DNA of 64,000 nucleotides, from assembly GCF_023055435.1 (NCBI RefSeq), contig NW_025963802.1, forward strand, positions 2,480,001-2,544,000, read 5' to 3'. This document shows, piece by piece, positions 7,342-64,000 of the stretch. Position 1 is the first letter of the stretch. The number at the start of each line of letters is the position of its first letter. The notes beneath the pieces are model-generated. The model saw only the letters and a program-made list of their open reading frames with translations, ran no database searches and was not told the origin of the DNA. This DNA comes from Haliotis rufescens. Lineage: Eukaryota. The position numbers were made by a program, and so were the translations under genes.

Positions 7342-7766
7342 ACAAATTTGAAACTACGGGCCCGACACGAGATCTACCTGGCACGGGCCTATGGTCAGGC
7401 GCTCATTTCGAACACTGGAGGATTAGGTTTCAAGTTCTTAGACCAGCACTTCAGTTGCAAGGCGCGTCAGCTTGATGCGCGCCCAAAGTGATGCACGTCT
7501 GCTCAGAGGTTTACAACTTTGGTGAAGTCGATAAACATGGGTATGACACGAAGGCGAATCAGGGATTCGAACCGAAACCGTTGTTGTTCTGATGATTTAA
7601 CACCACTAACGTCTGGAACAATAGACGGTGTTATGTTTCTTCCAATGACCAATCAACTGTGAGGATCACTAAAATGCACATTATCGGAACGTTATTATAT
7701 TCGATTTTTCAGCCCTTATTGGTCTAAGGGAATGAGCATTTATTAGTGTGTGTTCTTTAGCCAATC

Positions 7767-7939
7767 GGGGCGGTCGGGTAGCCTAGTGGTTAAAGCGTTC
7801 GCTCGTCACGCCGAAGACCCGGGTTCGATTCCCGACATGGGTACAATGTGAGAAGCCCATTTCTGGTGTCCCCTGCCGTGATATTGCTGGAATATTGCTA
7901 AAAGCGGCGTAAAACCATACACACATATTCACTCACAAC
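7767..7939 (+). mobile_element. tRNA-derived SINE, family A
   Basis: Head GGGGCGGTCGGGTAGCCTAGTGGTTAAAGCGTTCGCTCGTCACGCCGAAGACCCGGGTTCGATTCCC and TSD TCTTTAGCCAATC. Confidence 0.92.
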
Positions 7940-32466: not shown

Positions 32467-32895
32467 ATTCATACAAAGCCTTAACAATCAGGTTCCAAAT
32501 TGGCGTCTGAAGGAGACATGGCTTGATTCATCAGCACACTTTAGTCCGAAAAACAAAACCTGTCTGATACTTTAAATCACGCACAAAGCACACTATTGTC
32601 TCTCATTTTCTACAGTGTGTCAATCTAAAACTTCTCTATATATCATCTGTTCATTTTGGAACCTTCAGTCAAGAATGATGCTTACAAAACGCATGGAAAC
32701 TACAAATATTAAAACAACAAGGAAAACATGTTCAATAAAAAGATTCAATGTAAGAATAAGTCGTCAACTGCAACATATGGAAAAATAAATCTAGAAAATA
32801 AATCTAGTCAGCTTATATATACTCCTAAGAAGCGCTAAATATCAAGACTGAATAATTCCCATGTATTACGCCAGTATGTCATCAAGTAACACCCA

Positions 32896-33061
32896 GGGGC
32901 GGTCGGGTAGCCTAGTGGTTAAAGCGTTCGCTCGCCACGCCGAAGACCCGGGTTCGGTTCCCGACATGGGTACAATGTGTGAAGCCCATTTCTGGTGTCC
33001 CCCGCCGTGATATTGCTGGAATATTGCTAAAAGCGGCGTAAAACCATACTCATTCACTCAC
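32896..33061 (+). mobile_element. SINE family A
   Basis: Full length, TSD TCAAGTARCACCCA. Confidence 0.92.
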
Positions 33062-34217
33062 TCAAGTAGCACCCAGCACGACTGTAGTCAGTATGTAGCA
33101 CCACTTTACAAGTACCGTAGTAAACAGTAACGGAAACAGAAAAATCAAATGTTTGGACCAGCAACAAGCTATGTTAGGATTTGAATCAGCCATGAAATAC
33201 AATTTGATTTTAGAGTATACAGTCTTTAGTGTATCGTTTAAAAGATCGTTGCAGAGGGGTACAACTTACGACATTCACTATAATACGATATTACTTGGTT
33301 AGAAAATAGCCAAAACGCATAAACAAATGTCTAATGCGTTATGTTTTGGTGTTGCACCAACGTGATTAACGTCTCTGTCTGCAACACTCAGGATGTTTCT
33401 TACACAGTGAGCTGACACGCCGGGAAAATGAAAGCAACGTTCAAAATCATTGTAATGCGTAGTTTTTCAACATGATGTTATTTAAGTGTCACGATTCGTC
33501 TTTAATTTTTAGTTGTCCCTATTGGAACCATTCTTGACCATCCACGCTAATAATAGATCATAAGCGTTCAGGTGATTACAGTAAATATTTTATTTATTTG
33601 AATGCCCCGTGTCAACAAATACAAAAGGATATTTTCAAATACATGCTTCGTCCAAATTAAATTAACTTTCCTGTTGACCCAAATAAGATCTAGTTTGTTA
33701 GTAAACAACACTTATAATATTTAAGTGTTGTAAACTACATAATCTGTGCACCAATCTTTGTAGATTATTACACATTGTCACCTGTGTACCTTTCTATAGC
33801 CCGATGAGCCACCACCACTGTCTTCCTCGCTTGTCCTACACGAAAAATGTAACGAGCTGTCTTATTGTTCCACTGCGTACGTCTAATTTATACATCTTAT
33901 CTAATATACCTGTATTCCAACATCAATTATCGGTTTATTTGATACCCCGCCTGGATTATCACTTGGTGATAATCTCCTCTCATCCCCGTATAGAAACACT
34001 GGACACACAAGTCATCACCGTCCCTCCCCAAGCTGGAGCGCTGGTAACTCACGAGGTGCTAGCTTCCTATAATTGCTCCGTTTTAGGCTGGATTTGTTGT
34101 TACAGAGTTTCAGTGGCTGCCTAACTCCTAATAAAGTAATTAGCCAGAAGTGTTAGCGGTTGTGTGCAGTACTTGTTAAGTAGTTTGTATATGTAATCAG
34201 GTCATTGATAGTGTGTA

Positions 34218-34580: not shown

Positions 34581-36704
34581 ATGACCTCCTCGCCAGTGTC
34601 CCGGATGAACATGCTTTGCCTTGATAGTCCTGATCACGTGACACTGGGTCTTCTGGGTATTCACGAAGATGCTGGTGAATTGCCTCGTAACCTCACTTTC
34701 GACGACGATGATGACTCACGTGACAGCGGTTTCGAATCTCACGGGAGTGATACTGAGGTAAATGTCCCGACAGTGTTGCTATTTCCACAGAACAACATAC
34801 CATGCTTTTAGTGTTCAGCAGATGTGGGTAAACACGTGATACTCGTAGATTTATTTACCAGGACCTGAACAGACATTGCACCTTCACAATACATCGTAAT
34901 ATTTCCTAATATATGATACTGGGGACTCCGGGTTAGATTATGCCCCCAACAACCTATTCTGGTCTTAGGAGGCAACGAAATTGGATCGATGATCAGACTC
35001 GATGATTTGGCTGAATGCGTCATCATATCCCGACGGCGTGTATTGTTCCTCAACTTTTAATTCACTGGATTGTCTGGTTTATAGTCCGCCGTCAAATAGC
35101 TGGAATAATTCTGAGTGCGACCCTGAACAGTAAACAAACAAAACACATTTCCTATTAAAAGTATGAAGATATTTGCTATCTCTTTTTTTAGGGATCTCCA
35201 CTCAACTGTTTTCTGTCGAGTAGAACAATCACCGACTTCAGTTCAGTCAGAAAATCTTTATTCTCATCAAAACGACCACATGATGAGGATGAAAGTCCTG
35301 TGACAAAAAGATCCAGATTGGATGAAGTCACGGAGCATCAGGGAGAGCTATGTATTTCTGAATCCCCCGAATCCATGAAATCAGCAGTGGATAAGATGGA
35401 GGCGGAAATCAACCTGATTGGCGATGGCTCAGAGGTAATAATTTATGTATGGCAAATATTAATAAACCACACACGTGTTTACACACTATTCGTTGCTCGT
35501 TCACGACTTATTCATATTTTGAAATTAATCTGAAATGGTCTACAGGAGATGACTTTCATTAATTTCGGTTTATCATGTTTCATTGCATACTCAAGTCATT
35601 ATTTGTTATCCAGTGCCACAGACTCCCGACCATCACAGGCCGACACAAGGATCTCAAGTCAGTGTCTCCACGCACAGCCAGTCACCTTCTGACAGGCAAA
35701 TACAATGACGTCATTTCCGGGTACCAGATCATCGACTGTCGATACCCGTATGAATATGAGGGTGGTCATATTGAGGTAAATAAAAGTTATTTGTTGATGT
35801 TTAAGACGGCAATGATGCAATGTCCGTACAAATCATAAATATTCATAATAGCGTTCACAAGACATTTTGTACATATTTTCATTCCTATGATCATGGTTCT
35901 TACAGGGTGCCATAAATCTCCACAACGAGGCTCAAATCAAGGAGTTAGTCACCAGCCTACGGGGGAGGGAGTCGAATCAGCGGAACATCCTCGTCTTCCA
36001 CTGTGAATTCTCGTCAGAGAGAGCACCCAAACTGTAAGTCGTGGTACCCCTTTTGAAACATTCTTTTTCATTAAACACTGACGGGTAATGTTTAACTGGT
36101 TAAAGATGTCCTCGATTTTTGACCAAACCCAGGCATGGAACTAAGACTTAAAATAGTTTATAGTCGATATATAGTTTTATGCTATTATACACAGTTCATA
36201 CCAAGATGTTCCTCAACTGATGCAAACATTCTTAAACCCAGATTACGCCATTTGCGGAGTTTAGACCGGAAGTTGAACAGTGACCGCTACCCGTTCCTCT
36301 TCTACCCGGAAGTGTATCTGCTGGATGGCGGTTACAAGGCCTTCTATGAACAACATCAGGTGCGTTCACATTTCACTTACAGACAATTTTAATCATTGTC
36401 ATTATGTCAGTGAAACTTAGAAACAGCATATGTATAGTTCTTTATCTGATTAATACATCACGTATTTCACAAAGCTGTTTTTAAAAAAGAGGTTGCAGTG
36501 AAATTCCATTACGCACAATGTTCCTTCTTCTTTCAGCGCCAGTGTCAACCAAACACTTACATTCCCATGCTACACCCAGACTACGCCAGCCAACTACGTC
36601 ACTTCCGGTCCAAGTCCAAGTCGAACAAGACCACAAAAAACAGATACTTGCGGAGTCAATGTTTAGAAATTGATGTTTCACCACTTAAATTTTCACTCTT
36701 GTAA
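34581..36704 (+). CDS. CDC25: Cdc25 (M-phase inducer) phosphatase, copy 1, intact, 331 aa
   Basis: Exons 34581-34757, 35192-35434, 35614-35775, 35906-36033, 36242-36359 and 36537-36704 total 996 nt with GT-AG boundaries. Motifs: [25 protein letters not shown], catalytic [26 protein letters not shown] and CQPNTYIPM. Confidence 0.95.
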
Positions 36705-38839: not shown

Positions 38840-39026
38840 AGTGAGTGAGTGAGTATGGTTTTACGCCACTTTTAGCAATATTCCAGCAATATCACGGCGG
38901 GGGGGGGGGGGGGGGGGGGGGGGGGGGCGCACCGGAAATGGGCTTCACACATTGTACCCATGTGTGGAATCGAACCCGAGATTTCGGCGTGACGAGCGAA
39001 CGCTTCAACCACTAGGCTACCCGACC
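38840..39026 (-). mobile_element. SINE family A with an expanded poly-G tract
   Basis: TSD GCCACTGTGTCATTA; G-run at about 38899-38927. Confidence 0.9.
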
Positions 39027-40864
39027 GCCACTGTGTCATTAAGTAACACACAGCACGACTGTAGTCAGTATACAGCATCACTAAGTACTGTAGCAAACAG
39101 AACAATCAAATGTATGGACCAGCAACTTACGACATTCACTATAATATGATATTACTTGGCTAGAAAATATCAAGTGAGCCAAAATGCATAAACAAATGTC
39201 TAATGCGTTGTGTTTTGGTGTTGCACAAACGTGGTTAACGTCTCCGTCTGCAGTTCAGGATGTTTCTTCCACAGTGAGCTGACACGCCGGGAAAATGAAA
39301 ATACCGTTAAAACCAGCGTAAACTTCAACTCATTCTAATGCGTAGTTTTTCAATATGATGTTATTTACGTGTCACGATTCGTCTTTAATTTTTAGTTGTC
39401 CCTATTGGTGCCATTTCTTGACCAACCCCGTTATTTCGTTAAGCATGTCACGAAATGAGCTAGTAATAGATCATAAGCGTTCATGTGATAAGTGTAACGT
39501 ATGTATATTTTATTTATTTCAATGCCCCTAATCAAAAAATACTAGAGGATATCTACAAATACATGCTTCTTCCAAATCAAATTAACTTTCCTGTTGACCC
39601 AAATAAGACCTGGTGCCATTACAAATAAAGTGTAGCCCATTATGAAGGGAATGTGTCGATGCTCTGCGCCATCATTGTCTTGTATAACTATTGTCCTGTA
39701 TAATTTATTTTCACCAAGAACGTCTAGTTGGAGATATAATAGCTATATCGTTAGAAATAACTAAAGATATATGTAGTCCTGATGTTATGGGTCGGTGCTC
39801 ATGCTTTCGACCACTGGTTTCCCGGTTCTTATACACCAGAGGTTTTAATTTAACCTCGTTTTTTTGTGATGCCATTCTTGACCATCCCCGCTAGAAATAG
39901 ATCATAAGCGTTCAGGTGAATACTGTAAATATGTCAATGCCCCGTGTCAACAAATACAAAAGGACATTTTCAAGTACTTGCTTCGTCCAAATCACATTGA
40001 CGTTCCTGTTGACCCAAATAAGATCTAGTTTGTTAGTAAACAACACTTATAATATTTAAGTGTTGTTAACTACATAATCTGTGCACCAATCTTTGTAGAT
40101 TATTACACATTGTCACCTGTGTACCTTTCTATGGCCCCATCAGCCACCACCTCTGTCTTCCTCGCTTGTCCTACACAAATAATGTAACGAGCTGTACACT
40201 GGGTATGTCTAATTTATACCTCTTATCTAATATACCTGTATTCCAACATCAATTATCGGTTTATTTGATACCCCGCCTGGATTATCGCTTGGCGATAATC
40301 TCCTCTCATCCCCGTGTAGAAACACTGGACACACAAGCCATCACCGTCTCTCCCCAAGCTGGAGCGCTGGTAACCCACGAGGTGTTAGCTTCCTATAATT
40401 GCTCTGTTTTAGACTGGATTTGTTGTTACAGACTTTCAGTGGCTGTTTAACTCCTAATAAAGTAATTAGCCAGAAGTGTTAACGGTAGTGTGCAATAGTT
40501 GTAAAGTAGTTTGTATATGTAATCAGGTCATTGATAGTGTATAGGTATATATACAGTATGGGAGGCTGCAGGGGACATCATTAACTAGCTACGGTTGTAT
40601 CTGACACAGGGGCAGTCACTACAAGAAAACTCACACTTTTTGTCAAACAGGAAGACAGAAACTACAGGTAAGGATTCATCTTTATTGAAGACGTTGTAAT
40701 GTTTCACCAACAGTCAGATCATGGCTGTTAAATACCTTCAACACATCACTTACGTTTCTGAAATGCAGTCCCAGCTTTATTGTTACCTCTATTTTGTATC
40801 TTCATTTATCAATATGAAATAAGACTCAATGTCATAACAATGTAATTATTATTTTCAGTTTAAA

Positions 40865-42950
40865 ATGACCCCCTCGCCTCCTTGCCTTGATAGTCCTGAT
40901 CACGTGACATTAGGTACTCTGGGTATTCACGAAGATGCTGGCGTTTTGCCTCGTAGCCTCACTTTCGACGACGACGATGATGACTCACGTGACAGCGGTT
41001 TCGAATCTCACGGGAGTGATACTGAGGTAAATGTCCCGACAGTGTTGCTATTTCCACAGAACAACATACCATGCTTTTAGTGTTCACCAATTGTGGGTAA
41101 ACACGTGATACTCATAGATATATCTACCAGGACCTGAACAGACAATGCACCTTCACAATGCATCGTAATATTTCCTAATATATGATCCTTGGGACTCCGG
41201 GTTAGATTAGGCCCCCAACAACCTATCCTGGTCTTAGGAGGCGACCAAAATTGATCGATGATCAGACGCCGTGACTTTGCGTCATCATACCACGACGGCG
41301 TGTATCGTGCCTCATGTTGTCATTCACGGGATTGTCTGGCCCTGATTCGTTTATTTTCAGGCCGCCTTCATAATGCTGGAATAATTCTGAGTGTCACGTT
41401 AACAAACACAATACATTTTCTATTACATGTATCAAGATATTTGCTATCTCTTTTCAGGGATCTCCGCTCAACTGTTTTCTGTCGAGTAGAACAATCACCG
41501 ACTTCAGTTCAGTTCGAAAATCTTTATTCTCATTAAAACGACCACATGATGAGGATGGAAGTCCTGTGACAAAGAGATCTAGATTGGATGAAGTCACGGA
41601 GCATCAGGGAGAGCTATGTATTTCTGAATCCCCCGAACCCATGAAATCAGCGGTGGATAAGATGGAGGCGGAAATCAACCTGATTGGCGATGGCTCAGAG
41701 GTAATAATTTATGTATGGCAAATATTAATAAACCACACACGTGTCTACACACTACTCGTTGCTCGTTCACGACTTATTCATATTTTGAAATTAATCTGAA
41801 ATGGTCTACAGGAGAAGACTTTCATTAATTTCGGTTTATCACGTTTCATTGCATAATGAAGTCAATTTTTGCCATCCAGTGCCACAGACTCCCGACCATC
41901 ACAGGCCGACACAAGGATCTCAAGTCTGTGTCTCCACGCACAGTCAATCACCTTCTGACGGGCAAATACAATGACGTCATTTCCGGGTACCAGATCATCG
42001 ACTGTCGATACCTGTATGAATATGAGGGTGGTCATATTGAGGTAAATAAAAGTTGATGATTAAGACGAGAATGATATAATGACTAATCTGTAACGATCCT
42101 AAATATATTCTAACAGCGTTCACAAGACATTTTGTATATATTTTCATTCCTATGATTATGGTTCTTACAGGGTGCCATAAATCTCCACAACGAGGCTCAA
42201 ATCAAGGAGTTAGTCACCAGCCTACGGGGGAGGGAGTCGACTGAACGGAACATCCTCGTCTTCCACTGAGAATTCTCGTCAGAGAGAGCACCCAAATTGT
42301 AAGTCGTGGTACCTCTTTTGAAACATTCTTTTTCATTAAACACTGACGAGTAATGTTTAACTGGTTAAAGATGTCCTCGATTCTTGACAAAACCAAGGCA
42401 TGGAACTAAGACTTAAAATAGTTCATAGTCGATATATAGTTTTATGCTATTATACACAGTTCATACCAAGATGTTACTCAACTGATGCAAACATTCTTAA
42501 CCCAGATTACGCCATCTGCGGAGTTTAGACCGGAAGTTGAACTGTGACCGCTACCCGTTCCTCTTCTACCCGGAAGTGTATCTGCTGGATGGCGGTTACA
42601 AGGTCTTCTATGAACAACATCAGGTGCGTTCACATTTCACAAAGAGACAACTATTTTCATTATGTCAGTGAAACTTAGAAACTGCATATGTATAGTTCTT
42701 CATCTGATTAATACATCACGTATTTCACAAAGCTGTATTTGAAAAAGAGGTTGCAGTGAAATTCCATTACTGACAATGTTCCTCCTTCTTTCAGCGCCAG
42801 TGTCAACCAAACATCTACATTCCCATGCTACACCTGGACTACGCCAGTCAGCTACGCAAGTCCAAGTCGAACAAGACTATGAAAAACAGATACTTGCGGA
42901 GTCGATGTTTAGAAATTGATGTCTCACCACTTAAATTTTCACTCTTTTAA
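40865..42950 (+). pseudogene. CDC25: Cdc25 copy 2: open frame except TGA at the catalytic Cys codon (probable pseudogene; recoding not excluded)
   Basis: Exons 40865-41026, 41458-41700, 41880-42041, 42171-42298, 42506-42623 and 42795-42950 have intact splice sites. The active site reads CAC TGA GAA TTC at 42264-42275. There are in-frame indels of -18, +3 and -12 nt, and DCRYP is changed to DCRYL. Confidence 0.85.
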
Positions 42951-45127
42951 TACCGACATCACTTAAAGATCACTTTTGACTTTGTTGATATTTATACATT
43001 GTTATGTATCTTTATTTGTTGACCGTTCTCTGCATTTCAGTGCTGATTGTCTATGTTGTCTGAAACCGAAATAAAAAGTATACTTGTATGCATATATTTC
43101 TTCTTTTCATAAGCGTTCCAGCTATCAATTGTTAACATGCAATCTGTCGTTGGGACGTTTGTACAACAAATACTTCAGGTACCATTTATAACATTTCTGA
43201 CGTAAATTGATGCATCAGTGACAAACATGATGTCCGATGCAATTCCTTATCTTGATTTGTACCATATGTTAACGTGTTGTTTTTTCAGGTGAACAAATGA
43301 CTTGCCTTTACATGTGTTTGTGACAGATGTCACTGGTGGGGCAGGATACGAATCTCTTTTAGCAAACAACTGGTGTCATCACTATTTGATAGTTAAACAC
43401 ATGCTCATGATATAGTCGGAATCGTACAATCGACTCTGCTTTTGGCAGAGATTTCTTATAGTTTGTCACTTGTATTTATCTAAAATGGGATAGACAAAAC
43501 ATTTAACAACCGTCGTTTAGTGCTCAATTTATCCTATAATTCAAATTGATTAACAGCAAAATGATTGACACTTTCTTGACCAAACCAATTCCTCGATAAT
43601 TCATACTTTATTGACTAAACGTGACGGGAAATACCAAATACAAATAAATTGTTAATGCAAGGGAATAATCAGTCTAGATAAATGTTAATTTTACTTGATA
43701 AAACCAAACAGAAGACTAATATTTCCCTGACATGATAGAACGGTATGTAATGCATTACACATCTAATCAGCCGTTTATGATATTCAGCTTGGCGTCATTA
43801 CTCATTTTCAGTAACCCAGTCATATAATTTTCACCGCTATTTTGGTTTTTACGCCCAACACCATATCCGTGCTTGTAGGTTTCACCAAAGTGGTTAACGT
43901 CTATGGTCTGTATTACCTCGAGCTTTCCTCCCACATTTAGCTGACTCGAAGTGATACAGTGGGAATACTGTAAAACGCGGCGTCCAGCCAAACTCACAGA
44001 CTCACCATCTTTAAAACCAGCTCCAATACAGCATTGAATTATTCCGCCAGATGTTATGACAGTGGAGAGGGTGACAGTAATGATGGCATACGTCAACTAT
44101 TCAATTCTCTCCAGGGAAATTCCAAATTCTGATTTCTGAATCGAAGTTTTCCCAGATCACCCATGGATGCCTACCCAAGTATACCGTCTCTCTGAAGGGT
44201 GTCCCATTTCGCCGACTTGATAGTCTAACACTGTCTACCCACACTAAGCATTCTTTTCGAGTTCTGGTACATACCTACCTGTGACATATCCTTGGCCAAG
44301 GCAAATCCCTGTGTGTTGGTAGTGTCTGTACTTGCTTTCAGATGACATTCTGCTTGGATCACAGATTCACTGAAGACAAAATATGTGAAAAAGTGTTAAT
44401 GACACTTTTTTACTATTCTTTTACTTTCAATCTGACAGTGCACAGTTATAAATTTTCAAAAGTCAACTGCTGTCAATTCAGTGCTCAAGGTCGGCGAATA
44501 TTAGGGAAAGTCGTTAATTTATTTAAAAGTTATTACTTTCTAAAATTCAAATGTATTTCGAAACTGTAGTTTCTCATTGTCAGCAATGCATGTATGTAAA
44601 ACTAAGCATGAAATACTCTCTCTCCTTGTTGTCCTATTATCAGTGAAATGAAATATATAACGTCAACGCTAGAGAACAGTCAGTCTATATTGCCTGTCAA
44701 AACAGATTCCACGGCAAAGCCTTAATAATCAGGTTCCAAGTTGGCGTATGAAGAAGACATGGCTTGATTCATCAGCACACTCTAGTCTGAAAAACAAAAC
44801 CTGTCTGATACTTTAAATCACGTACAAAGCACACTACTGTCTCTCATTTTCTACAGTGTGTCATTCTAAAACTTCTCTATACATCCTCTGCTCCTTTTGA
44901 ATCCTTTAGTCAAGAATGATGTTCACAAAGGCATCGAAACTATAAATAATAACACAAAGAAAACATGTTGAATAAAAATGTTCAATGTGAGAATAAGTCG
45001 TCAACTGCAACATATGGAAAAATAAATCTAAAAAATAAATCTAGTCAACATGAATGTACCTCCTCCTTATAAGCGTAAATATCAAGGTTGAATAATTATC
45101 ATCTCATATTTCGCCACTGTGTCATTA

Positions 45128-45294
45128 GTGAGTGATTGATTATGGTTTTACGCCACTTTTAGCAATATTCCAGCAATATCACGGCGGTGGGACACCAGAA
45201 ATGGGCTTCACACATTGTACCCATGTCGGGAATCGAACCCGGGTCTTCGGCGTGACGAGCGAACGTTTTAACCACTAGGCTACCCGACCGCCCC
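45128..45294 (-). mobile_element. SINE family A, same insertion site as 38840-39026 in the duplicated unit
   Basis: Same TSD (CCACTGTGTCATTA) and orientation. Confidence 0.9.
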
Positions 45295-46572
45295 ACTGTG
45301 TCATTAAGTAACACACAGCACGACTGTAGTCAGTATACAGCATCACTAAGTACTGTAGCAAACAGAACAATCAAATGTATGGACCAGCAACTTACGACAT
45401 TCACTATAATACGATATTACTTGGCTAGAAAATATCAAGTAAGCCAAAACGCATAAACAAATGTCTGATGCGTTGTGTTTTGGGGTTGCACCAACGTGGT
45501 TAACGTCTCCGTCTGCAACACTCAGGATGTTTCTTCCACAGTGAGCTGAAACACCGTTCAAACCAGCGTTAACTTCAACTCATTCTAATGCGTAGTTTTC
45601 CAATTTGATGTTATTTTCGTGCCACCATTCGTCTTTAATTTTTAGTTGTCCCTTTTGGTGCCATTTCTTGACCAACCCCGTTATTTCGTTAAGCATGTCG
45701 CGAAATGAGCTAGTAATAGATCATAAGCGTTCAGGTGATAAGTGTAACATCTGTATATTTTATTTATTTCAGTGCCCCGTGTCAACAAATACTAGAGGAT
45801 ATCTACAAAGACCTGCTTCGTCCAAATCAAATTAACTTTCCTGTTGACCCAAATAAGACCTGGTGCCATTACAAATGAAGTGTAGCCCATTATGAAGGGA
45901 CTGTGTCGATGCTCTGCGCCATCATTGTCTTGTATAACTATTTTCTGTATAATTTATTTTCACCAAGAACGTCTAGTTGGAGATATAATAGCTATATCGT
46001 AAGAAATAACTAAAGATATATGTAGTCCTGATGTTATGGGTCGGTGCTCATGTTCTCGACCACTGGTTTCCCGGGGTTTTTTTTATACACCAGAGGTTTT
46101 AATTTAACCTCTGTTTTTTTAGGGAAATGGAAATGTTACAGAAAAGATACATTTGGAAATATTAAAATCCGTTCATGAATTTACATCAGCATCTGGCAAT
46201 TTTACATATTTTGTCTAACTGCAAACTATCGTTTAATCTCTCATGTATCGGATTTCTGCTTACTTTCTTTTACTTCAGAGTGGACAACTGTTAATACAAA
46301 ATAACTACGTTATTATTTTCCCTTGACTGCACAATACAACTGTATGACTGTATGACATTGTATGACATCTGGGGCGGTATTGATACAAGTCTTGTTTACC
46401 AATCCAGCTTCTTACATGTCATGAAATAGATATATTTAAAACACATATTTACACTGGTCTGGTCGCCAACATGCTTCCATTCATTGCTCATTTCGCTTTA
46501 TTTAACGTGTATATTATGTGTATTATTGTTGAAAATAATCTTTAGACTACATGTTTAATATTATATCTAATA

Positions 46573-48066
46573 TACTGAACAACAAAAGTTCCTGTGACAT
46601 TGAATAAGATTTAATGCAAAGTTACGTTTTTTTACCAAATCTGAAACAATTTCGGTTTACAACAGATAAAAGACTCCTGAAAGTGTTCAAATGATTTAAT
46701 TTGCCATACTGACTTCAGAAAATGCGTGATTTCCTTAAAAAAAAAAATGAACATGCCAAAATGTCAATTTACAAATCAATTGCGTGTGTGTCCACCTCTG
46801 GTTGCGATGCAAGCAACACATCTTCGTATCATGGAATGGACCAGGCGTCGCACAAAGTCCTGTGGGATATCTGTCCATATCTGCTGGAGCATGTTTCGAA
46901 GTTACTGGAGTGTCTGTGGAACACGTGGTTGACGTCGAAGGCGCCGATCCATCTCATCCCACATGTGCTCGATTGGTGAGAGATCAGGCGAACGAGCCAG
47001 CCAGAGGATGACATTCACGTTGTTTTGTTGAAGAGAATCCTGAACAAGTAGAGCATTGACATTTTGAAAGGAAATGCCTTGGCCATCACGACGCAAAAAA
47101 CAGTAGAACAACAGGGCCGATGATCTCGTCGCGGTAGCGCTGTCCGTTGAGATTTCCCTCTACCACTATCAAACAGGTCCTCTGTCTTACTGTAATCCCA
47201 CCCCATACCATAACGCTGCCGCCCCCGAACTGATCTTCTTCCATGACACAATGATTGACGAAACGTTCACCTCGACGTCGGTACACTCGAATCCGTCCAT
47301 CGCTTTGGCTGAGGTGAAAACGAGACTCGTCAGTGAATAGAACTTGTCCCCACTGCATGGCCGTCCAGCGTAGGCGCTGTCTGCACCACTGTAGACGTGC
47401 TTGATGGTGGTTTCCTGTCAAAATGGGACGTCTGGCGGGTCTTCTGTCGACAATCCCTGCACATCTGAGGCGACGACGTACGGTTTGTGAAGATATTCGT
47501 CGAAGGCCAGGGATGCTTCTTGCAGTCACTGTTGCTGGCTGGAATCGATTTCGTAGGTGTGTTGTTCGAATCCAGTTGTCTTGTAGATTATTGGTTACGC
47601 GTGGCCTGCCACTCCGAGGATTGTCTCTGACTGCATTCGTCTGTTGCCAACGTTGCCATAAACACCAAATGGTGTTTCTGTGGACGTTAAATTGTCATGC
47701 TCGTTGGCTCGATCCTGCTTCAAGCATACCAATGGCTCGCAGACGCTCATTTTCGGACAGGCGTGGCATTTCGTAATGTATAAAAATTGCTTAATTTTGT
47801 TGTTGTTTTCTGACTGGTTGTCAGCACGATGCTAAACAATGCACATGGAATCCCGTTAACGCACATGTTTTTATACCCATTCTTGGGTAGTGAAATACAT
47901 GGGGCTTGTATAAAAGTCAACTGTTGCATGGAATGCATGCTTTTCTGTAGCAGTTGCGTTTTTGTGACTTGATGCCATACATGTACTACAATATTGAAAA
48001 CCAAACTTTACTTGTTTGAAAAATACACTAAAATATTGGTGTCACAGGAACTTTTGTTGTTGAGTA
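46573..48066 (-). mobile_element. Tc1/mariner transposon, second copy, defective
   Basis: Same TIRs and TA TSD as 29485-30989. It has frameshifts, a deletion removing the DNARPH catalytic segment, and a premature stop near 46902. Confidence 0.95.
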
Positions 48067-48629
48067 TATATTTAGCCATTTAAGGCTACCCCTTACATCA
48101 GTTTCCACCTATACTTCCATGTGACATTTCATTATTTTCCGTCTTTGACTTCATTTACGTAGTTTTGAATAAAAAGGCTTATGTTTCTCACGTTTCAATA
48201 TATGTATTTGTATGAACAAAGTTTCTTTCTCCGTTAAGAATTGTATACTGCTTTGCTTGGTCCAATCTGCATGGATAGACAAAGCGTGTAATCTTTTATG
48301 TATGTCTATTTACATAGATTGTGACCCAATCACGTTAAACAAGTAACCAATCAATCAGACCTACAGATAACTGCATGTTGCCCGCGTTGTGTCTTTAGTG
48401 TGGCACTTTCCCAACACAAACGATTATACCGAAGTGCCTGATGTTATTCTTCAACGTCACATTATAAATATGTATATATATATTTGGAAAAAGCACAGTA
48501 AAGTTCTAACTCTCAGGTACAATATAGTAATAATTAAATAAGTGGAGTAAGATTGAACACAGTTTCAATTGGCTTGCTCTTTGTTTGGTCTAGTTTGTTT
48601 GTACAAACCACACTTAAAATATTGATACT

Positions 48630-48830
48630 GATACCAATGACAGCATCGCGCACTGACTTAACCCACTCTGAAACACATTCAACAGGTTCCTCTTCTCTTC
48701 TGGCCCATTTATTGGCATATTCGTCGACAGCATCCATAATGATTTTACTCAAACCCAAATATAAGAATATATACCTGATATGCCAGTCCACGTGGCAATG
48801 TACAGGGCCATGTAAAATCGTGGACAATCA
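48630..48830 (-). mobile_element. Retroelement ORF fragment (resembles molluscan Penelope-like RT-associated ORF)
   Basis: KIIMDAVDEYANKWARREEEPVECVSEWVKSVR resembles a motif recalled upstream of RT domains in mollusc retroelements; not verified by search. Confidence 0.45.
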
Positions 48831-49439
48831 ACATGAATAAATGATGTCAAAAAAAATAATCAAAAAAATATCCATTATGATTTTAGAAGTTGTGATCCCA
48901 ATTGGTGTATCGTTTTAAGGATCCTCACAGACAGGGAGAACCTACGACAGTAATATACGATATTCCTTGGCTATCAAATAGCAAGTAAGCCACAACGCAT
49001 CAAGGCGTTTCTTATGCGTTGTGTTTTGGGGTTCCACCAACGTGGTTAACGTCTCCGTCTGCAATACTCAGGATGTTTCCTCCACAGTGAGCTGACACGC
49101 CGGGAAAATGCAAACACTGTTTAAACCCGCGTCAACTTCAACTCATTCTAATGCGTAGTTTTCCAATATGATGTTATTTTCGTGTCACCATTTGTCTTTA
49201 ATTTTTAGTTGTCCCTTTTGGTGCCATTTCTTGACCAACCCCGCTAGTAATAGATCATAAGCGTTCAGGTGAAAACTGAAAATATGTCAATGCCCCGTGT
49301 CAACAAATACAAAAGGATATCTTCAAGTACATGCTTCGCCCAAATCAAATTAACTTTCCTGTTGACCCAAATAAGATCTAGCTTGTTGGTACAAACAACA
49401 CTAATATTTAAGTGCTGTTAAACTACATAGTCTGTGCAC

Positions 49440-50091
49440 CAATCCTTGTAGATTATTACACATTGTCACCTGTGTACCTTTCTATGGCCCTATCAGCCAC
49501 CACCACTGTCTTCCTCGCTTGCCCTACACAAATAATGTAACGAGCTGTCTTATTGTGCCACTGCGTACGTCTTATTTATACATCTTATCTAATATACCTC
49601 TATTCCAACATCAATTATCAGTTTATTTGATACCCCGCCTGGATTATCACTTGGTGATAATCTCCTCTCATCCCCGTATAGAAACACTGGACACACAAGC
49701 CATCACCGTCCCTCCCCAAGCTGGAGCGCTGGTAACTCACGAGGTGCTAGCTTCCTATAATTGCTCCGTTTTAGGCTGGATTTGTTGTTACAGAGTTTCA
49801 GTGGCTGTTTAACTCCCAATAAAGTAATTAATCTGATTAATACATCACGTTTTTCACAAAGCTATATTTGAAAAAGAGGTTGCAGTGAAATTCCATTACT
49901 CACAATGTTCCTTGTTCTTTCAGCGCCAGTGTCAACCAAACACCTACATTCCCATGCTACACCCAGACTACGCCAGTCAGCTACGTCACTTCCGGTCCAA
50001 GTCCAAGTCGAACAAGACCACAAAAAACAGATACTTGCGGAGTCGATGTTTAGAAATTGATGTTTCACCGCCTAAATTTTCACTCATGTAA
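49440..50091 (+). pseudogene. CDC25: Cdc25 copy 3: upstream promoter region fused to the last intron; only the last exon (49924-50091) remains
   Basis: Junction AAAGTAATTA|ATCTGATTAA at 49830/49831 joins equivalents of about 34142 and about 36445 (about 2.3 kb deleted). The exon reads [16 protein letters not shown]...PPKFSLM*. Confidence 0.92.
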
Positions 50092-50365
50092 TAATGACAT
50101 CATTTACATATCACTTTTGACATTGTTGACATGGTTGATATTATTACATTGTTATGTATCTTTTGTTGATTGATCTCTGCATTTTAGTGCTGATTGTCTA
50201 TGTTCTCTAAAACCGAAATAAAAGTTTCAATGTACGCATATATTTCTTCTTTTCCCGAGCATTCCAGCTATCAATTCACAAAGGTGGTCACTCAAACATA
50301 CAACTAAAACTACTAGCAACGTATGCAATCTGTCTTTTGGGATGTTTCTACAACAAACAGTCCAG

Positions 50366-50472
50366 GACCCACTTGCACAAAGCGATCTTAGCGCTAAGAT
50401 GATTGTAACTCCCATACTTTAACATAGGCTTACGATAGTCTTAGCGCTAAGATCGCTTTGTGCAAGTGGTCC
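50366..50472. mobile_element. About 110-bp palindromic MITE
   Basis: Arms CCACTTGCACAAAGCGATCTTAGCGCTAAGA, flanked by CAG on both sides and absent from paralogous 3' flanks. A half copy is at about 14565-14640. Confidence 0.8.
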
Positions 50473-51448
50473 CAGGAAACATTCATAACATTTCTGACAC
50501 AAATGTGACCTATCAGTGACAAAACTGATGTCCGATGCAATTCCCTATCTTGACTTGTACAATATGTTCATTGTTTTTTTAGGTGACCAATGACTTGCCT
50601 TTGCATGTGTTTGTGTCAGGTGTCACTGGTGGGGTAGGATACGTACCTCTTTTAGCAAACAACTGGTATCTTCACTATTTGATAGTTATTCATGAACACA
50701 TGCTCATGATGTACTAGTTGTTAGATCGTACAATCGACTGTTCTTTCGGCAGAGATTTCTTATGGTAATGGAACTGTTTTTGACGCTTGTATTGATCTAA
50801 AATGGGAGAGACAAGGTATATGACAACCTCCTTTATGTATTCAATATGTAATCTAAATGTGTAAGTATTATTAGTAATTACCAATTACCCCAAGTAAATA
50901 ATACAAATTCAAAATGCATGCCTCTCCATCCTGAACTGTGATGTGGCTGAACTTGATCTACATCGCGATCCCTCGTCCCTACTGTCAATATGGCTCCCAT
51001 GGTTGTTGTTGTCCAGTCATAACATCTCGTGGAATAATTCAACACTAAGTGTATTATATCTTTATTTACAGTACTGAAAAGGTCAAAGGCCTATAGTATA
51101 CATATACATACAGTAGGAATGGGACTGATGTGGTTTTATAGATGGTGAGTCTGTGAGTTTACCTGGACGCCCCTTTTATTAATATTCCAGCTATATCACC
51201 GCGTGTCAGCTTAATGTGGGAGGAAAGCTCGAGGTAATGTAGACCATAGACGTTAACCACTTTTGGGAAACCTATAGGCACGGATATGGTGTTGACAAAC
51301 ATAGAAACACAATCAGGGCGTTATTCCATCGTGCGTAAAAAGGAAAATAGCGGTGGAAATTATATGAATGAATAACCGAAAATGAGTAATGAGCCACGCT
51401 GAATGTTATGAACGGCTGATTACATTTGTAATGCGTTACATGCCATTT

Positions 51449-53691: not shown

Positions 53692-55833
53692 TTACATGAG
53701 TGAAAATTTAGGCGGTGAAACATCAATTTCTAAACGTAGACTCTGCAAGTATCTGTTTTTCACAGTCTTGTTCGACTTGGACTTGGACCGGAAATGACGT
53801 AGCTGACTGGCGTAGTCCAGGTGTAGCATGGGAACGTAAGTGTTTGGTTGACACTGGCGCTGAAAGAACAAGGAACATTGTCAGTAACTGAATTTCACTG
53901 CAACCTCTTTTTCAAATACAGCTTTTTGAAATATGTGACGTAATAATCAGATCAAGAACTATACATATGTTGTTTCTAAGTTTCACTGACATAATTACAA
54001 TGATTAAAACTGTCTGTAAGTGAAATGTGAACGCACCTGATGTTGTTCATAGAAGGCCTTGTAACCGCCATCCAGCAGGTACACTTCCGGGTAGAAGAGG
54101 AACGGGTAGCGGTCACTGTTCAACTTCCGGTCTAAACTACGCAGATGGCGTAATCTGGATTTAAGAATTTTGCATCAGTTGAGTAACATCTTGGTATGAA
54201 CTGTATATAATAGCATAAAATTGTGTATCACCTAAAAACATTTATAATTCTTAGTTCATTACCTTGGCTTGGTCAAGAATCGAGGACATTTTTAACCAGT
54301 TAAACATTACTCGTCAGGGTCTAACGAAAAAGAATGTTTCAAAAGCGCTTCCACGACTTACAGTTTGGGTGCTCTCTCTGACGAGAATTCACAGTGGAAG
54401 ACGAGGATGTTCCGTTCAGTCGACTCCCTCCCCTGTAGGCTGGTGACTAACTCCTTGATTTGAGCCTCGTTGTGGAGATTTATGGCACCCTGTAAGAACC
54501 ATAATCATAGGAATGAAAATATATACAAAATGTTTTGTGAACGGTATCAGGAATATTTAGGATCGTTACAGATTAGTCATTGCATCATTCTCGTCTTAAT
54601 CATCAACAAAAAACGTTTATTTACCTCAATATGACCACCCTCATATTCATACGGGTATCGACAGTCGATGATCTGGTACCCGGAAATGACGTCATTGTAT
54701 TTGCCGGTGAGAAGGTGATTGACTGTGCGTGGAGACACTGACTTGAGATCCTTGTGTCGGCCTGTGATGGTCGGGAGTCTGTGACACTGGATAAAAAATA
54801 ATGAATTGAGTATGCAATAAAACACGACATGACACGAAATAATGAGAGTCAGATCCCGTTGACCATTTCAGAATAATTTCAAAATATGAACATGTCTTGA
54901 ACGAGCAACGAATAGTGTGTAGACACGTGTGTGGTTTATTAATATTTGCCATACATAATTTTTTACCTCTGAGCCATCGCCAATCAGGTTGATTTCCGCC
55001 TCCATCTTATCCAGCGCTGATTTCATGGATTCGGGGGATTCAGAAATACATAGCTCTCCCTGATGCTCCGTGACTTCATCCAATCTAGATCTTTTTGTCA
55101 CAGGACTTTCATCCCCATCATGTGGTCGTTTTGATGAGAATAAAGATTTTCGAACTGAACTGAAGTCGGTGATTGTTCTACTCGACCGAAAACAGTTGAG
55201 CGGAGATCCCTGGAAAAAAAGAGATCGCAAATATCTTCATACTTGTAATAGGAAATTTGTTTTGTTTGTTTACTGTTCAGGGTCGCACTCAGACTTATAT
55301 CAGCTATTTGACGGCGAACTATAAACAATCGTGTTTGAACCAGACAATCTAGTGAATTAAAATTGAGAAACAATACATGCCGTCGGGGTATGATGACGCA
55401 ATCAGCCAAATCACCGAATCTGATCATCGATCCATTTTGGTCGCCCTAAGACCAGGATAGGTAGCTGGGGGCCTAATCTAACCCGGACTCCCCAGGATCA
55501 TATATTAGGAAATACTACGATGCATTGTGAAGGTGCATTGTCTGTTCAGTTCTTGGTAAATAAATCTATGAGTATCACGTGTTTATCCACATCTGGTGAA
55601 CACTAAAAGCATGGTATGTTGTTCTGTGGAAATAGCAACACTGTCGGGATATTTACCTCAGTATCACTCCCGTGAGATTCGAAACCGCTGTCACGTGAGT
55701 CATCATCGTCGTCGAAAGTGAGGCTACGAGGCAATACACAAGCATCTTCGTGAATACCCAGAATACCCAATGTCACGTGATTGGGACTATCAAGGCAAAG
55801 CATGTTCATCCGGGACACTGGAGAGGGGGTCAT
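53692..55833 (-). CDS. CDC25: Cdc25 phosphatase, copy 4, intact, 331 aa
   Basis: Exons 55833-55657, 55209-54967, 54786-54625, 54489-54362, 54154-54037 and 53859-53692 have the same lengths as copy 1; [10 protein letters not shown] is intact. Confidence 0.95.
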
Positions 55834-58676: not shown

Positions 58677-58882
58677 NNNNNNNNNNNNNNNNNNNNNNNN
58701 NNNNNNNNNNNNNNNNNNNNNNNNNNNNNNNNNNNNNNNNNNNNNNNNNNNNNNNNNNNNNNNNNNNNNNNNNNNNNNNNNNNNNNNNNNNNNNNNNNNN
58801 NNNNNNNNNNNNNNNNNNNNNNNNNNNNNNNNNNNNNNNNNNNNNNNNNNNNNNNNNNNNNNNNNNNNNNNNNNNNNNNNNN
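58677..58882. other. Assembly gap (206 N)
   Basis: Run of n. Confidence 1.
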
Positions 58883-62101: not shown

Positions 62102-63621
62102 TTACAAGAGTGAAAATTTAAGTGGTGAAACATCAATTTCTAAACATCGACTCCGCAAGTATCTGTTTTTCGTGGTCTTGTTTGACTTGGACTTAGACCG
62201 GAAGTGACGTAACTGACTGGCGTAGTCCAGGTGTAGCATGGGAATGTAAGTGTTTGGTTGACACTGGCGCTGAAAGAATAAGGAACATTGTCAGTAACGG
62301 AATTTCACTGCAACCTCTTTTTGAAATACAGCTTTGTGAAATACGTGTTGTATTAATCAGATAAAGAACTATACATATGCTGTTTCTACGTTTCACTGAC
62401 ATAATTACAATGATTAAAACTGCCTGTAAGTGAAATGTGAACGCACCTGGTGTTGTTCATAGAAGGCCTTGTAACCGCCATCCAGCAGATACACTTCCGG
62501 GTAGAAGAGGAACGGGTAGCGGTCGCTGTTCAACTTCCGGTCTAAACTCCGAAGATGGCGTAATCTGGGTTTGAGAATGTTTGCATCAGTTGAGGAACAT
62601 CTTGGTATGAACTGTATATAATAGCATAAAACTATATATCGACTATGCACTATTTTAAGTCTTAGTTCAATGCCTCGGCTTGGTCCAGAACCGAGGACAT
62701 TGTTAACCAGTTAAACATTACTCGTCAGGGTCTAACGAAAAAGAATGTTTCAAAAGAGGTACCACGACTTACAGTTTGGGTGCTCTCTCTGACGAGAATT
62801 CACAATGGAAGACGAGGATGTTCCGTTGAGTCGACTCCCTCCCCTGTAGGCTGGTGACTAACTCCTTGATTTGAGCCTCGTTGTGGAGATTTATGGCACC
62901 CTGTAAGAACCATGATCATAGGATTGAAAATATGTACAAAATGTTTTGTAATCGCTATCAGGAATATTTATGATATTTACAGATAAGACATTGCATCATT
63001 GCCGTCTTAATCATCAACAAATGGCTTTTATTTACCTCAATATGACCACCCTCATATTCATATGGGTACCGACAGTCGATGATCTGGTACCCGGAAATGA
63101 CGTCATTGTATTTGCCAGTCAGAAGGTGTTTGACTGTGCGTGGAGACACTGACTTGAGATCCTTGTGTCGGCCTGTGATGGTCGGGAGTCTGTGGCACTG
63201 GATAAAAAATAAGGAATTGAGTATGCAATAAAACACGACATGACACGAAATTAATGAGAGTCAGATCCCGTTGACCATTTCAGAATAATTTCAGAAGATG
63301 AACATGTCTTGAACGAGCAACGAAAAGTGTGTAGACACGTGTGTGGTTTATTAATATTTGCCATACATAAATTATTACCTCTGAGCCATCGCCAATCAGG
63401 TTGATTTCCGCCTCCATCTTATCCACCGCTGATTTCATGGATTCGGGGGATTCAGAAATACATAGCTCTCTCTGATGCTCCGTGTCTTCATCCAATCTAG
63501 ATCTCTTTGTCACAGGACTTTCATCCTCATCATGTGGTCGTTTTGGTGAGAATAAAGATTTTCTGACTGAACTGAAGTCGGTGATTGTTCTACTCGACAG
63601 AAAGCAGTTGAGCGGAGATCC
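62102..63621 (-). CDS. CDC25: Cdc25 phosphatase, copy 5; last five coding exons intact, first coding exon beyond the window end
   Basis: Exons 63621-63379, 63197-63036, 62900-62773, 62564-62447 and 62269-62102 keep an open frame; the active site reads CAT TGT GAA TTC. Confidence 0.93.
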
Positions 63622-64000
63622 CTGAAAAAATGAGATAGCAAATATCTTCATACTTGTAATAGAAAATTTGTTTTGTTTGTTTACTGTTTACAACCGCACT
63701 CAGAATTATTCCTGCTCTTTGACGGCGGACTTTAAACAATCGTGTTTGAACCAGATAATCCAGTGAAATAAAAAAGAGGAACGATACACGCCGTCGGCGT
63801 ATGATGACGCAATCAGCCAAGTCACTGCGTCTGATAATCGATCCATTTGGTCGCCTCTTAAGACCATCATAGGGTGCTGGGGGCCTGATCTAACCCCCAG
63901 GATCATAAATTAGGAAATATTAAGATGCATTGTGAAGGTGCATTGTCTGTTCAGGTCCTGGTAAATAAATCTATGAGTATCACGTGTTGACCCACATCTT

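What the first reader, a model, noticed from the sequence alone, without database searches (positions are those of the whole stretch)
42264..42275. Cdc25 copy 2 has UGA exactly at the catalytic cysteine: pseudogene, dead decoy or selenocysteine phosphatase?
Seen: HCEFSSER is encoded CAC TGA GAA TTC (TGA at 42267-42269), whereas copies 1, 4 and 5 have TGT. It is the only stop in the frame, all splice sites are intact, and all three indels are in frame. Established: Cys/UGA alignment at a catalytic residue is the classic selenoprotein signature, and I know of no Sec-containing Cdc25. Against: TGT to TGA is a single substitution; the 3' UTR is nearly identical to that of the Cys copies, with no canonical SECIS visible; and the conserved DCRYP (now DCRYL) and HFRS segments are damaged. 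As a stop it would be an NMD target or give a truncated protein retaining the degron and docking motifs. A pseudogene is the more likely reading.
Basis: partly seen in the sequence, partly recalled or inferred. Interest (0 to 1): 0.75.

Follow-up and report, generated by a model that had tools for sequence, protein, structure and literature searches.

The report
Broken copy of duplicated Cdc25 gene
One of several near-identical neighbouring copies of the cell-cycle phosphatase gene Cdc25 has a stop codon where its catalytic cysteine should be, and the evidence points to an ordinary, recently disabled duplicate rather than a selenium-containing enzyme.

Summary
Window 42264-42275 reads CAC TGA GAA TTC, and the TGA at 42267-42269 sits at the catalytic Cys of the Cdc25 HCX5R motif.

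The gene (c2) is one unit of a ~6.3 kb tandem array. c1, c4 and c5 are intact with TGT, and c3 is a remnant. Of 19 Cdc25-like paralog loci in this 1.33 Gb genome, 17 use TGT, 1 uses TGC, and only c2 has TGA.

The genome does use selenocysteine: it has tRNA-Sec, and GPx and deiodinase genes with in-frame TGA. Two methods found no SECIS near c2; together they found candidates in 5 of 10 control regions. The likely 3' UTR is ~120 nt, is 155/159 identical to Cys copy c1, and has no (A/G)TGA core.

In contigs of three other samples, under two organism labels, the only sequence laid on the site reads TGT and restores Pro in DCRYP. One of these samples carries c2's own 18-nt exon-1 deletion.

Verdict: a young nonsense allele or unprocessed pseudogene. 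It is ordinary. The base could not be checked in the source individual's reads, and no RNA evidence was obtained.

The parts
40865..41026 (+). c2 exon 1 (ATG at 40865). Carries the c2-specific 18-nt deletion after 40878 and a 3-nt insertion at about 40966-40968.
   Evidence: The X5 contig 40702-40940 lies across the deletion without a gap, and X5 lacks the 3-nt insertion.
41458..41700 (+). c2 exon 2 (regulatory region, 81 codons).
   Evidence: No Pfam match.
41880..42041 (+). c2 exon 3, start of the Cdc25/rhodanese catalytic domain. The CTG codon at 42012-42014 gives DCRYL in place of DCRYP.
   Evidence: Aligns to human CDC25[14 protein letters not shown] at E 4e-16. X1, X6 and X5 all read C at 42013.
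42171..42298 (+). c2 exon 4 with the active-site loop H-*-EFSSER.
42267..42269 (+). TGA in place of the catalytic Cys codon (TGT in c1, c4 and c5).
   Evidence: X1, X6 and X5 all read T at 42269.
42506..42623 (+). c2 exon 5 (its first base completes the split codon). c2-specific S>C and A>V changes.
42795..42950 (+). c2 exon 6 with the TAA stop at 42948-42950. A 12-nt deletion after 42856 removes the HFRS-coding codons.
42951..43090 (+). Probable 3' UTR, with the AATAAA at 43070 conserved in all four copies. No (A/G)TGA core lies in it.
   Evidence: The end of the UTR is inferred, not shown by RNA.
34581..36704 (+). c1, an intact paralog with TGT, and the sister copy of c2.
49924..50091 (+). 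c3 remnant. Only the last exon survives and it is intact, with HFRS. Exons 1-5 are deleted.
53692..55833 (-). c4, an intact paralog with TGT.
62102..64000 (-). c5, a paralog with TGT. Exon 1 lies just beyond the window end and reads open in L008.

Best explanation
c2 is a young, unprocessed (tandem-duplicated) Cdc25-like gene. In the assembled haplotype it has been disabled by a single T>A change that turns the catalytic Cys codon TGT into the stop TGA.

The UGA is read as a stop. Any product would be a ~221-residue fragment ending inside the rhodanese-fold catalytic domain. Any spliced mRNA would carry the stop upstream of two exon junctions and so would be open to nonsense-mediated decay (inferred).

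Function is covered by the intact neighbouring copies c1, c4 and c5 and by about 15 more paralogs on the same chromosome. The array evolves by birth and death with gene conversion. c3 is already a remnant, and c2 is the most recent loss, possibly still segregating as a null allele.

Shown: the sequence state, its uniqueness among the paralogs, the absence of a detectable SECIS, and TGT in the c2-like contigs of other samples. Inferred: termination at the UGA, NMD, lack of function, and the 3' UTR end.
For: - TGA is one substitution from TGT. TGT is used at 17 of 19 paralog loci, with 1 TGC and 1 TGA.
- c2 also carries P>L in the otherwise invariant [12 protein letters not shown] block, and a 12-nt deletion in exon 6.
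- c2-specific changes in exons 3-5 are 4 non-synonymous to 1 synonymous, against 4:12 summed over c1, c4 and c5 (Fisher p = 0.047).
- The Rfam scan of 40000-46500 on both strands at E <= 10 gave no SECIS_1 hit. My pattern scan gave 0 candidates in 42270-45200. At relaxed thresholds there were two candidates. They fold no better than shuffles (z -0.24 and +0.23), and one has a counterpart behind Cys copy c1.
- There is no (A/G)TGA between the TAA at 42948 and the conserved AATAAA at 43070. This UTR is 155/159 identical to c1's.
- At 42269 the only contig laid in each of X1, X6 and X5 reads T (32.5/32.5, 104.3/104.3 and 83/83). At 42013 all read C.
- The X1 contig 42158-42446 has 6 differences to c2, against 11, 22 and 11 to c1, c4 and c5. 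It is therefore c2-like, not a mislaid paralog.
- X5 carries c2's 18-nt exon-1 deletion and c2's letters at 41534 and 41558, yet has TGT. The paralog is therefore older than the stop.
- c3 shows that copies of this array do die.
Against: - c2's private changes are as rare in exons relative to introns (1.6% vs 4.3%) as in intact c4 (1.7% vs 4.2%). There is no frameshift, and all splice sites are intact. The copy therefore looks selected, or kept uniform by gene conversion, until very recently. A functional gene would look the same.
- Over all exons, c2's 11:6 against 23:28 in the others is not significant (p = 0.26).
- The A at 42269 could not be checked in reads of the assembled individual. 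No run held more than 0.50 of the words.
- Logan contigs can drop minority variants. The TGT contigs are deeper than the c2-unique contigs in the same runs (32.5 vs about 8 in X1). A minor TGA haplotype in those samples is therefore not excluded.
- The X6 contig at the site is closer to c4 and c5 (3 differences) than to c2 (5).
- SECIS detection was only moderately sensitive. Of 10 control regions behind genes with in-frame TGA, 3 hit by Rfam and 5 by either method.
- There are no RNA data. The one 'RNA?' run gave only unspliced pieces.
Confidence: 0.8

Rival explanations
1. The A at 42269 is an assembly or consensus error, or a somatic or rare read variant. The true c2 of this individual reads TGT and is an intact, if slightly odd, Cdc25 paralog.
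For: All three other samples read T at 42269. The source reads could not be examined. Exon conservation and splice sites look like those of a working gene.
Against: The site is not in a homopolymer or other simple repeat (CACTGAGAA). The same haplotype carries other private, damaging changes: P>L at 42013, also absent from the three samples, and the 12-nt deletion. These fit real decay. The contigs differ from the reference by about 2% throughout, so a private base is nothing unusual here.
Confidence: 0.08
2. The truncated product has a use of its own. It would comprise the N-terminal regulatory region plus half of the catalytic domain, and might act as a decoy for kinases, ubiquitin ligase or 14-3-3 partners of the intact copies. 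Alternatively, the transcript could be a regulatory NMD target.
For: Exons 1-2, with the DSGFES stretch, are open and conserved. The splice sites are intact.
Against: The stop is absent from the c2-like sequences of three other samples, including the one that shares c2's exon-1 deletion. It is therefore not a conserved state. A fragment ending inside the rhodanese fold is unlikely to fold (inference). There is no expression evidence.
Confidence: 0.05
3. The UGA is decoded. Either selenocysteine is inserted through an unrecognised SECIS, giving a Sec-Cdc25, or near-cognate readthrough yields a little full-length enzyme.
For: Cys aligned with UGA at a catalytic residue is the classic selenoprotein signature. 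The genome has tRNA-Sec with anticodon TCA, and GPx and deiodinase genes with single in-frame TGAs. The frame downstream of the TGA is open. SECIS detection missed half of the controls.
Against: No SECIS was found by either method. The probable UTR has no core motif and is 97.5% identical to that of Cys copy c1. TGA is unique among 19 paralogs and absent from three other samples. Conserved residues are damaged on both sides of it. The base after the UGA is G, not the C that I recall as favouring readthrough.
Confidence: 0.02

Closest known systems
Cdc25 (M-phase inducer) dual-specificity phosphatases, e.g. human CDC25A/B/C
   Same: Exons 3-5 encode the rhodanese-fold catalytic domain. They carry [12 protein letters not shown] and the HCEFSSER active-site loop, aligned to PDB CDC25A 1c25 and to CDC25B and CDC25C chains.
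   Different: These proteins are short (about 322 codons) and lie in a lineage-specific expansion of at least 19 loci. Exon 2, searched on its own, matched no Pfam family. c2 lacks the catalytic Cys codon.
Unprocessed (duplicated) pseudogenes, or segregating nonsense alleles, in tandem gene families
   Same: A single premature stop in one member of a near-identical array that keeps its introns and intact neighbours. Another member (c3) is already reduced to a remnant.
   Different: It is very young. There is no frameshift, and exon conservation is still like that of the intact copies.
Sec-containing rhodanese-like sulfurtransferase of marine bacteria (GOS selenoproteome)
   Same: A rhodanese-superfamily protein listed as a selenoprotein (PMC2398784, table passage seen). 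This shows that the fold can host Sec.
   Different: It is bacterial, uses a bacterial SECIS, and is a sulfurtransferase rather than a phosphatase. Nothing here shows decoding of the UGA in c2.
SelTryp of Kinetoplastida
   Same: A eukaryotic selenoprotein that contains rhodanese domains (PMC1557815, passages seen).
   Different: Its rhodanese active sites keep Cys. The Sec lies in a C-terminal CxxU motif, and the gene has a SECIS.

Membership tests
Cdc25 phosphatase | Rhodanese-fold catalytic domain similar in sequence to solved CDC25 structures | tested here: met
   c2 exon 3 against CDC25B chains, E 4e-16. c1 exon 4 against CDC25A 1c25, E 6e-06. Single exons gave only weak Pfam Rhodanese hits, below the cut-off.
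Cdc25 phosphatase | Active-site HCX5R loop with a catalytic Cys | tested here: not met
   c2 reads H-stop-EFSSER. c1, c4, c5 and 15 further paralogs have HCEFSSER.
Cdc25 phosphatase | N-terminal regulatory region of the M-phase inducer type (Pfam family name recalled, not called up) | tested here: inconclusive
   c1 exon 2 alone gave 0 Pfam families at E <= 1. Exon 1 was not searched. The joined protein was not searched, by instruction.
Eukaryotic selenoprotein gene | In-frame UGA aligned with Cys in homologues | tested here: met
Eukaryotic selenoprotein gene | SECIS element in the 3' UTR | tested here: not met
   No SECIS_1 hit at E <= 10 in 40000-46500. No pattern candidate in 42270-45200. 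No core motif in 42951-43070. Controls: 5 of 10 regions behind genes with in-frame TGA gave a candidate by at least one method.
Eukaryotic selenoprotein gene | UGA conserved in orthologues or other individuals | tested here: not met
   X1, X6 and X5 read TGT in the only contig laid on the site. Contigs cannot exclude a minority allele.
Eukaryotic selenoprotein gene | Purifying selection downstream of the UGA | tested here: inconclusive
   Counted from the listing, private changes downstream of the stop are 4 non-synonymous to 2 synonymous, plus a 12-nt deletion. The numbers are too small to decide.
Eukaryotic selenoprotein gene | Sec machinery present in the genome | tested here: met
   tRNA-Sec at 79.9 bits with anticodon TCA. 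GPx and deiodinase hits with a single in-frame TGA.
Unprocessed pseudogene / null allele | Disabling lesion in a copy that keeps introns and has intact paralogs | tested here: met
Unprocessed pseudogene / null allele | Relaxed constraint | tested here: inconclusive
   Catalytic core 4:1 against 4:12 (p = 0.047). Whole gene 11:6 against 23:28 (p = 0.26). The exon/intron ratio of private changes is like that of the intact copies.
Unprocessed pseudogene / null allele | No stable full-length product | not testable with these tools
   No spliced RNA contig was laid. The X19 pieces include intron sequence.

The most novel reading that the evidence does not exclude
c2 encodes the first selenocysteine-containing Cdc25, or any protein tyrosine phosphatase-type enzyme with Sec. 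On this reading it is a very recent Cys-to-Sec switch, decoded through a SECIS too divergent for Rfam and for my pattern scan, or lying in a longer UTR isoform.
Probability: 0.015. Interest if true: 0.85.

Novelty: already known. Interest (0 to 1): 0.08.

Why it matters
If the UGA were decoded as selenocysteine, this would be a new selenoprotein family and a natural test of selenium chemistry in a cysteine phosphatase. The evidence instead makes it a routine nonsense lesion in a redundant tandem duplicate.

Its practical value is twofold. First, it is a caution for selenoprotein screens: Cys/UGA alignment alone is expected by chance in large, young gene families whose Cys codon is TGT. Second, it gives a small, dated snapshot of birth-and-death turnover in an unusually large Cdc25 expansion.

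Tried and rejected
- The whole-genome search with Rfam SECIS_1 returned nothing, and nothing in its own controls either, so it says nothing.
- Pfam Rdx (SelW/T/H) gave no hit in the genome. Sep15/SelM gave one hit without a stop and was not used further.
- Two of four GPx and three of six deiodinase control regions gave no SECIS by either method. I therefore treat the negative result at c2 as supportive, not decisive.
- The 'RNA?' run X19 gave only pieces that include intron sequence, plus pieces of high-copy repeats. It says nothing about expression or splicing.
- Whether c2's 12-nt exon-6 deletion occurs in the other samples could not be read. There is no row for it, and coverage across it is not shown.
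- I considered a variant genetic code with UGA = Cys and rejected it. The copies end in TAA, and TGA inside the GPx and deiodinase hits is single.
- I considered A-to-I editing of UGA and rejected it. It would give Trp, not Cys (established knowledge).
- I did not identify the species.
- The spliced protein was not assembled or searched, by instruction. Exons were searched and counted one by one.
- The search for homologous proteins, the search of protein representatives, structure prediction and fold search were not used. Single exons fall outside their useful range, and the question did not need them.
- Literature: (Cdc25 + selenocysteine + SECIS) found 14 papers, of which 12 were listed. 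One search (selenoprotein + rhodanese + selenocysteine) found 51, of which 12 were listed. From titles and abstract starts alone, none reports a Sec-containing Cdc25. I read only passages of PMC1557815 and PMC2398784. Supplements were not consulted and could list further selenoprotein families.

Full report
**What is there.** The window reads GTC TTC CAC TGA GAA TTC TCG TCA GAG AGA around 42258-42287, with TGA at 42267-42269. In frame this is [16 protein letters not shown].

Motif and self-BLAST scans show a tandem array of ~6.3 kb units:
- c1 lies on the + strand, with its active-site exon at about 36000.
- c2 lies on the + strand and is the copy in question.
- c3 is a remnant. Exons 1-5 are deleted, and an intact last exon survives at 49924-50091.
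- c4 lies on the - strand.
- c5 lies on the - strand and runs off the window end. Its exon 1 reads open just beyond the end, in L008.

The units are about 88-95% identical over exons and introns.

**Gene model of c2.** By alignment to the other copies and by splice dinucleotides (with the exon 4 donor corrected), the exons are:
- E1 40865-41026
- E2 41458-41700
- E3 41880-42041
- E4 42171-42298
- E5 42506-42623
- E6 42795-42950, ending in TAA

That is 969 nt. The TGA is the only internal stop, and every acceptor AG and donor GT is present.

Exons were searched one by one. c2 exon 3 aligns to human CDC25B catalytic-domain chains (E 4e-16), with L in place of the P of [13 protein letters not shown]. 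c1 exon 4 aligns to CDC25A 1c25, with its Cys on the C of [13 protein letters not shown], and to the C-to-S mutant chain 8roz_C at the same column. Pfam on single exons gave only sub-threshold Rhodanese hits.

**How unusual is the TGA within the genome?** The window is G000:C24:2480001-2544000, in a 1.33 Gb assembly of 615 contigs. A DNA search with c2 exons 3-5 found only four copies at 93% identity or more, all inside the window. It also found two further clusters of Cdc25-like genes on the same contig, at 5.21-5.24 Mb and 36.68-36.77 Mb. Across the 30 fetched loci there are 19 distinct active-site exons. Of these, 17 have TGT, 1 has TGC, and only c2 has TGA. TGA is thus one transversion away from the family's standard codon, in a family large enough for such a hit to be unremarkable.

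**Can this genome make selenoproteins?** Yes.
- tRNA-Sec genes score up to 79.9 bits against a cut-off of 47, and ARAGORN reads the anticodon as TCA.
- Several GPx hits carry a single in-frame TGA.
- At least eight deiodinase-like open frames carry a single in-frame TGA.

The Sec reading cannot be dismissed on grounds of missing machinery.

**Is there a SECIS?**
- Rfam cmscan with permissive filters (E <= 10) over 40000-46500, both strands, listed four weak matches and no SECIS.
- A SECIS-pattern scan of my own looks for an (A/G)TGA core, AA or CC 9-13 nt on, a 3' GA, helix II of at least 8 pairs and helix I of at least 4. It found nothing in 42270-45200 and nothing behind c1. Shuffled sequence gave a mean of 0.08 hits.
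- With relaxed thresholds, two candidates appear, at 43289-43323 and 43732-43780. They fold no better than shuffles (z -0.24 and +0.23). One has a counterpart behind Cys copy c1, and it lies in a very high-copy repeat.

As controls I used 10 regions downstream of genes with in-frame TGA:
- Rfam found SECIS_1 on the right strand in 3 of 10: L047 at 30.8 bits, L054 at 33.6 and 33.2 bits, and L053 at 24.6 bits.
- My scan found candidates in 4 of 10: L045, L047, L049 and L054.
- Either method found a candidate in 5 of 10.

The negative result at c2 is therefore meaningful but not decisive by itself.

A structural point adds to it. An AATAAA at 43070 is conserved in all four copies, 120 nt after the stop codon. 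Between TAA and that signal there is no (A/G)TGA at all, and the stretch is 155/159 identical to the UTR of Cys copy c1. The UTR end is inferred, not shown by RNA.

**Other samples.** The run search listed 20 holders in 9 studies, none with more than 0.50 of the sampled words and none on record as RNA. That corresponds to about 2% difference, so the source individual is probably not among them. I laid Logan contigs of X1 and X6 (organism A, two studies), X5 (organism B) and X19 ('RNA?', organism B) on 40500-44500.

What the contigs read at the two damaging sites:
- At 42269, the single contig laid in each DNA run reads T: X1 32.5 of 32.5, X6 104.3 of 104.3, X5 83 of 83. X19 does not cover the site.
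- At 42013, all three read C, which restores Pro.

Are these contigs c2 or mislaid paralogs?
- The X1 contig 42158-42446 differs from c2 at 6 places, against 11 (c1), 22 (c4) and 11 (c5). It is closest to c2.
- The shorter X6 contig is ambiguous, with 5 differences to c2 and 3 to c4 or c5.
- The c2 lineage is present in the other samples. X6 has a 356-letter contig identical to c2's intron 1 (41150-41505), which holds c2-specific indels.
- X5 has a contig across 40702-40940 without a gap, so it carries c2's 18-nt exon-1 deletion. It also keeps c2's letters at 41534 and 41558. It lacks the 3-nt insertion and has Ser at 41638, Pro at 42013 and Cys at 42269.

The simplest reading is that c2 is an older, distinct paralog that normally has TGT, and that the stop and the P>L change are recent and private, or rare, in the assembled haplotype.

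Caveats, stated fully:
- Contigs show presence, not absence.
- The TGT contigs are deeper than c2-unique contigs in the same run (32.5 vs about 8 in X1). They may be shared by several copies, and a minority TGA path could have been dropped.
- 64 'other letter' rows were not shown.
- The source individual's own reads were not available.

**Pattern of change.** Counting sites where one copy differs from the others that agree, exon by exon:

| Copy | Non-synonymous : synonymous |
|---|---|
| c1 | 8:10 |
| c2 | 11:6 (including the stop) |
| c4 | 11:8 |
| c5 | 4:10 (exon 1 missing) |

c2 against the rest is not significant (p = 0.26). In the catalytic core (exons 3-5) c2 has 4:1 against 4:12 for the others (p = 0.047).

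Against decay, c2's private changes are 13/807 (1.6%) in exons and 44/1020 (4.3%) in introns. That is much like intact c4, at 1.7% and 4.2%. For most of its history c2 was therefore constrained, or homogenised by conversion. Site patterns favour c1+c2 | c4+c5 (39 sites), but 12 and 6 sites support the other splits, which indicates exchange between copies. This fits a very recent lesion.

**Mechanism.**
- Shown: the codon, the family context, no detectable SECIS, and TGT in relatives.
- Inferred: the ribosome terminates at UGA. The following base is G, and as I recall C is the readthrough-prone context. The result would be a ~221-residue fragment that ends within the rhodanese fold.
- Inferred: the stop lies 29 nt before the exon 4/5 junction, and a further junction follows 118 nt later. 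A spliced mRNA would therefore be an NMD candidate under the junction rule known from vertebrates; in invertebrates a long effective 3' UTR has the same effect, according to established knowledge.
- Loss of the copy is buffered by the intact neighbours.

**Comparison with what is known.** This is a member of the Cdc25 family by catalytic-domain sequence, but c2 fails the defining catalytic Cys.

It is not a member of the selenoprotein class. The UGA/Cys alignment and the machinery are there, but SECIS and conservation of the UGA were tested and not met.

Rhodanese-superfamily selenoproteins exist. A Sec-containing rhodanese-like sulfurtransferase is listed in the GOS marine microbial selenoproteome (PMC2398784, passage seen). 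SelTryp of Kinetoplastida combines rhodanese domains with a C-terminal CxxU, but keeps Cys in the rhodanese active sites (PMC1557815, passages seen).

Two full-text searches gave listings in which no paper reports a Sec-Cdc25.

**Verdict.** This is a real sequence feature with an ordinary explanation: a young nonsense allele, or unprocessed pseudogene, in a birth-and-death tandem family. Confidence is 0.8. The residual probability lies mainly with an unverified base in the assembly (0.08), a used truncated product (0.05) and decoding of the UGA (0.02). Interest is low. Earlier scan notes near this place concern unrelated minisatellites and did not bear on the finding.

Noticed in passing
G000 contig C24: 2.51-2.54 Mb (this window), 5.21-5.24 Mb and 36.68-36.77 Mb; loci L005-L034: There is a large lineage-specific expansion of short Cdc25-like genes. 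At least 19 distinct active-site exons lie in three clusters on one chromosome-scale contig, and all but c2 have HCEFSSER.
   Followed up: partly
window 45193-50800: Copy 3 of the array is a remnant. Its upstream region and an intact last exon (49924-50091) survive. The stretch matching c2 40468-42699, which holds exons 1-5, is deleted. Extra sequence lies between about 46120 and 48939.
   Followed up: partly
window 43180-43580 and 43850-43983: Very high-copy repeats lie just downstream of c2. Summed contig word depth reaches 380,000 in the DNA runs, against tens elsewhere, with many loose ends and joints.
   Followed up: no
G000:C113:5559460-5608893: There are 45 listed hits at an identical score of 45.7 bits to the tRNA-Sec model, just under its cut-off of 47. 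They are spaced roughly 0.7-1.8 kb apart. This looks like a long tandem array of one tRNA-like gene with a long variable arm.
   Followed up: no
G000:C1:79878667-79881375 (L002-L004) and C101:16879460-16879545 (L001): tRNA-Sec is multi-copy. Three hits lie in tandem within 2.7 kb on C1, two of which ARAGORN confirmed with anticodon TCA, and one more lies on C101.
   Followed up: partly
G000:C1:37385699-37470612 and C1:28778228-28793973 (L049-L054): There are clusters of deiodinase-like genes, at least eight hits, each apparently in one open frame with a single in-frame TGA. Only some have a SECIS detectable within 1.5 kb.
   Followed up: partly
window 58677-58882: A run of 206 N lies between copies 4 and 5 of the array. 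By instruction it was left alone.
   Followed up: no
window 38845-39146, with related pieces at 2933-3097, 7747-7919, 32891-33062 and 45127-45317: A short dispersed repeat with a G-rich run (it translates as poly-Gly) recurs between the array units and elsewhere in the window. It is probably a mobile-element fragment.
   Followed up: no
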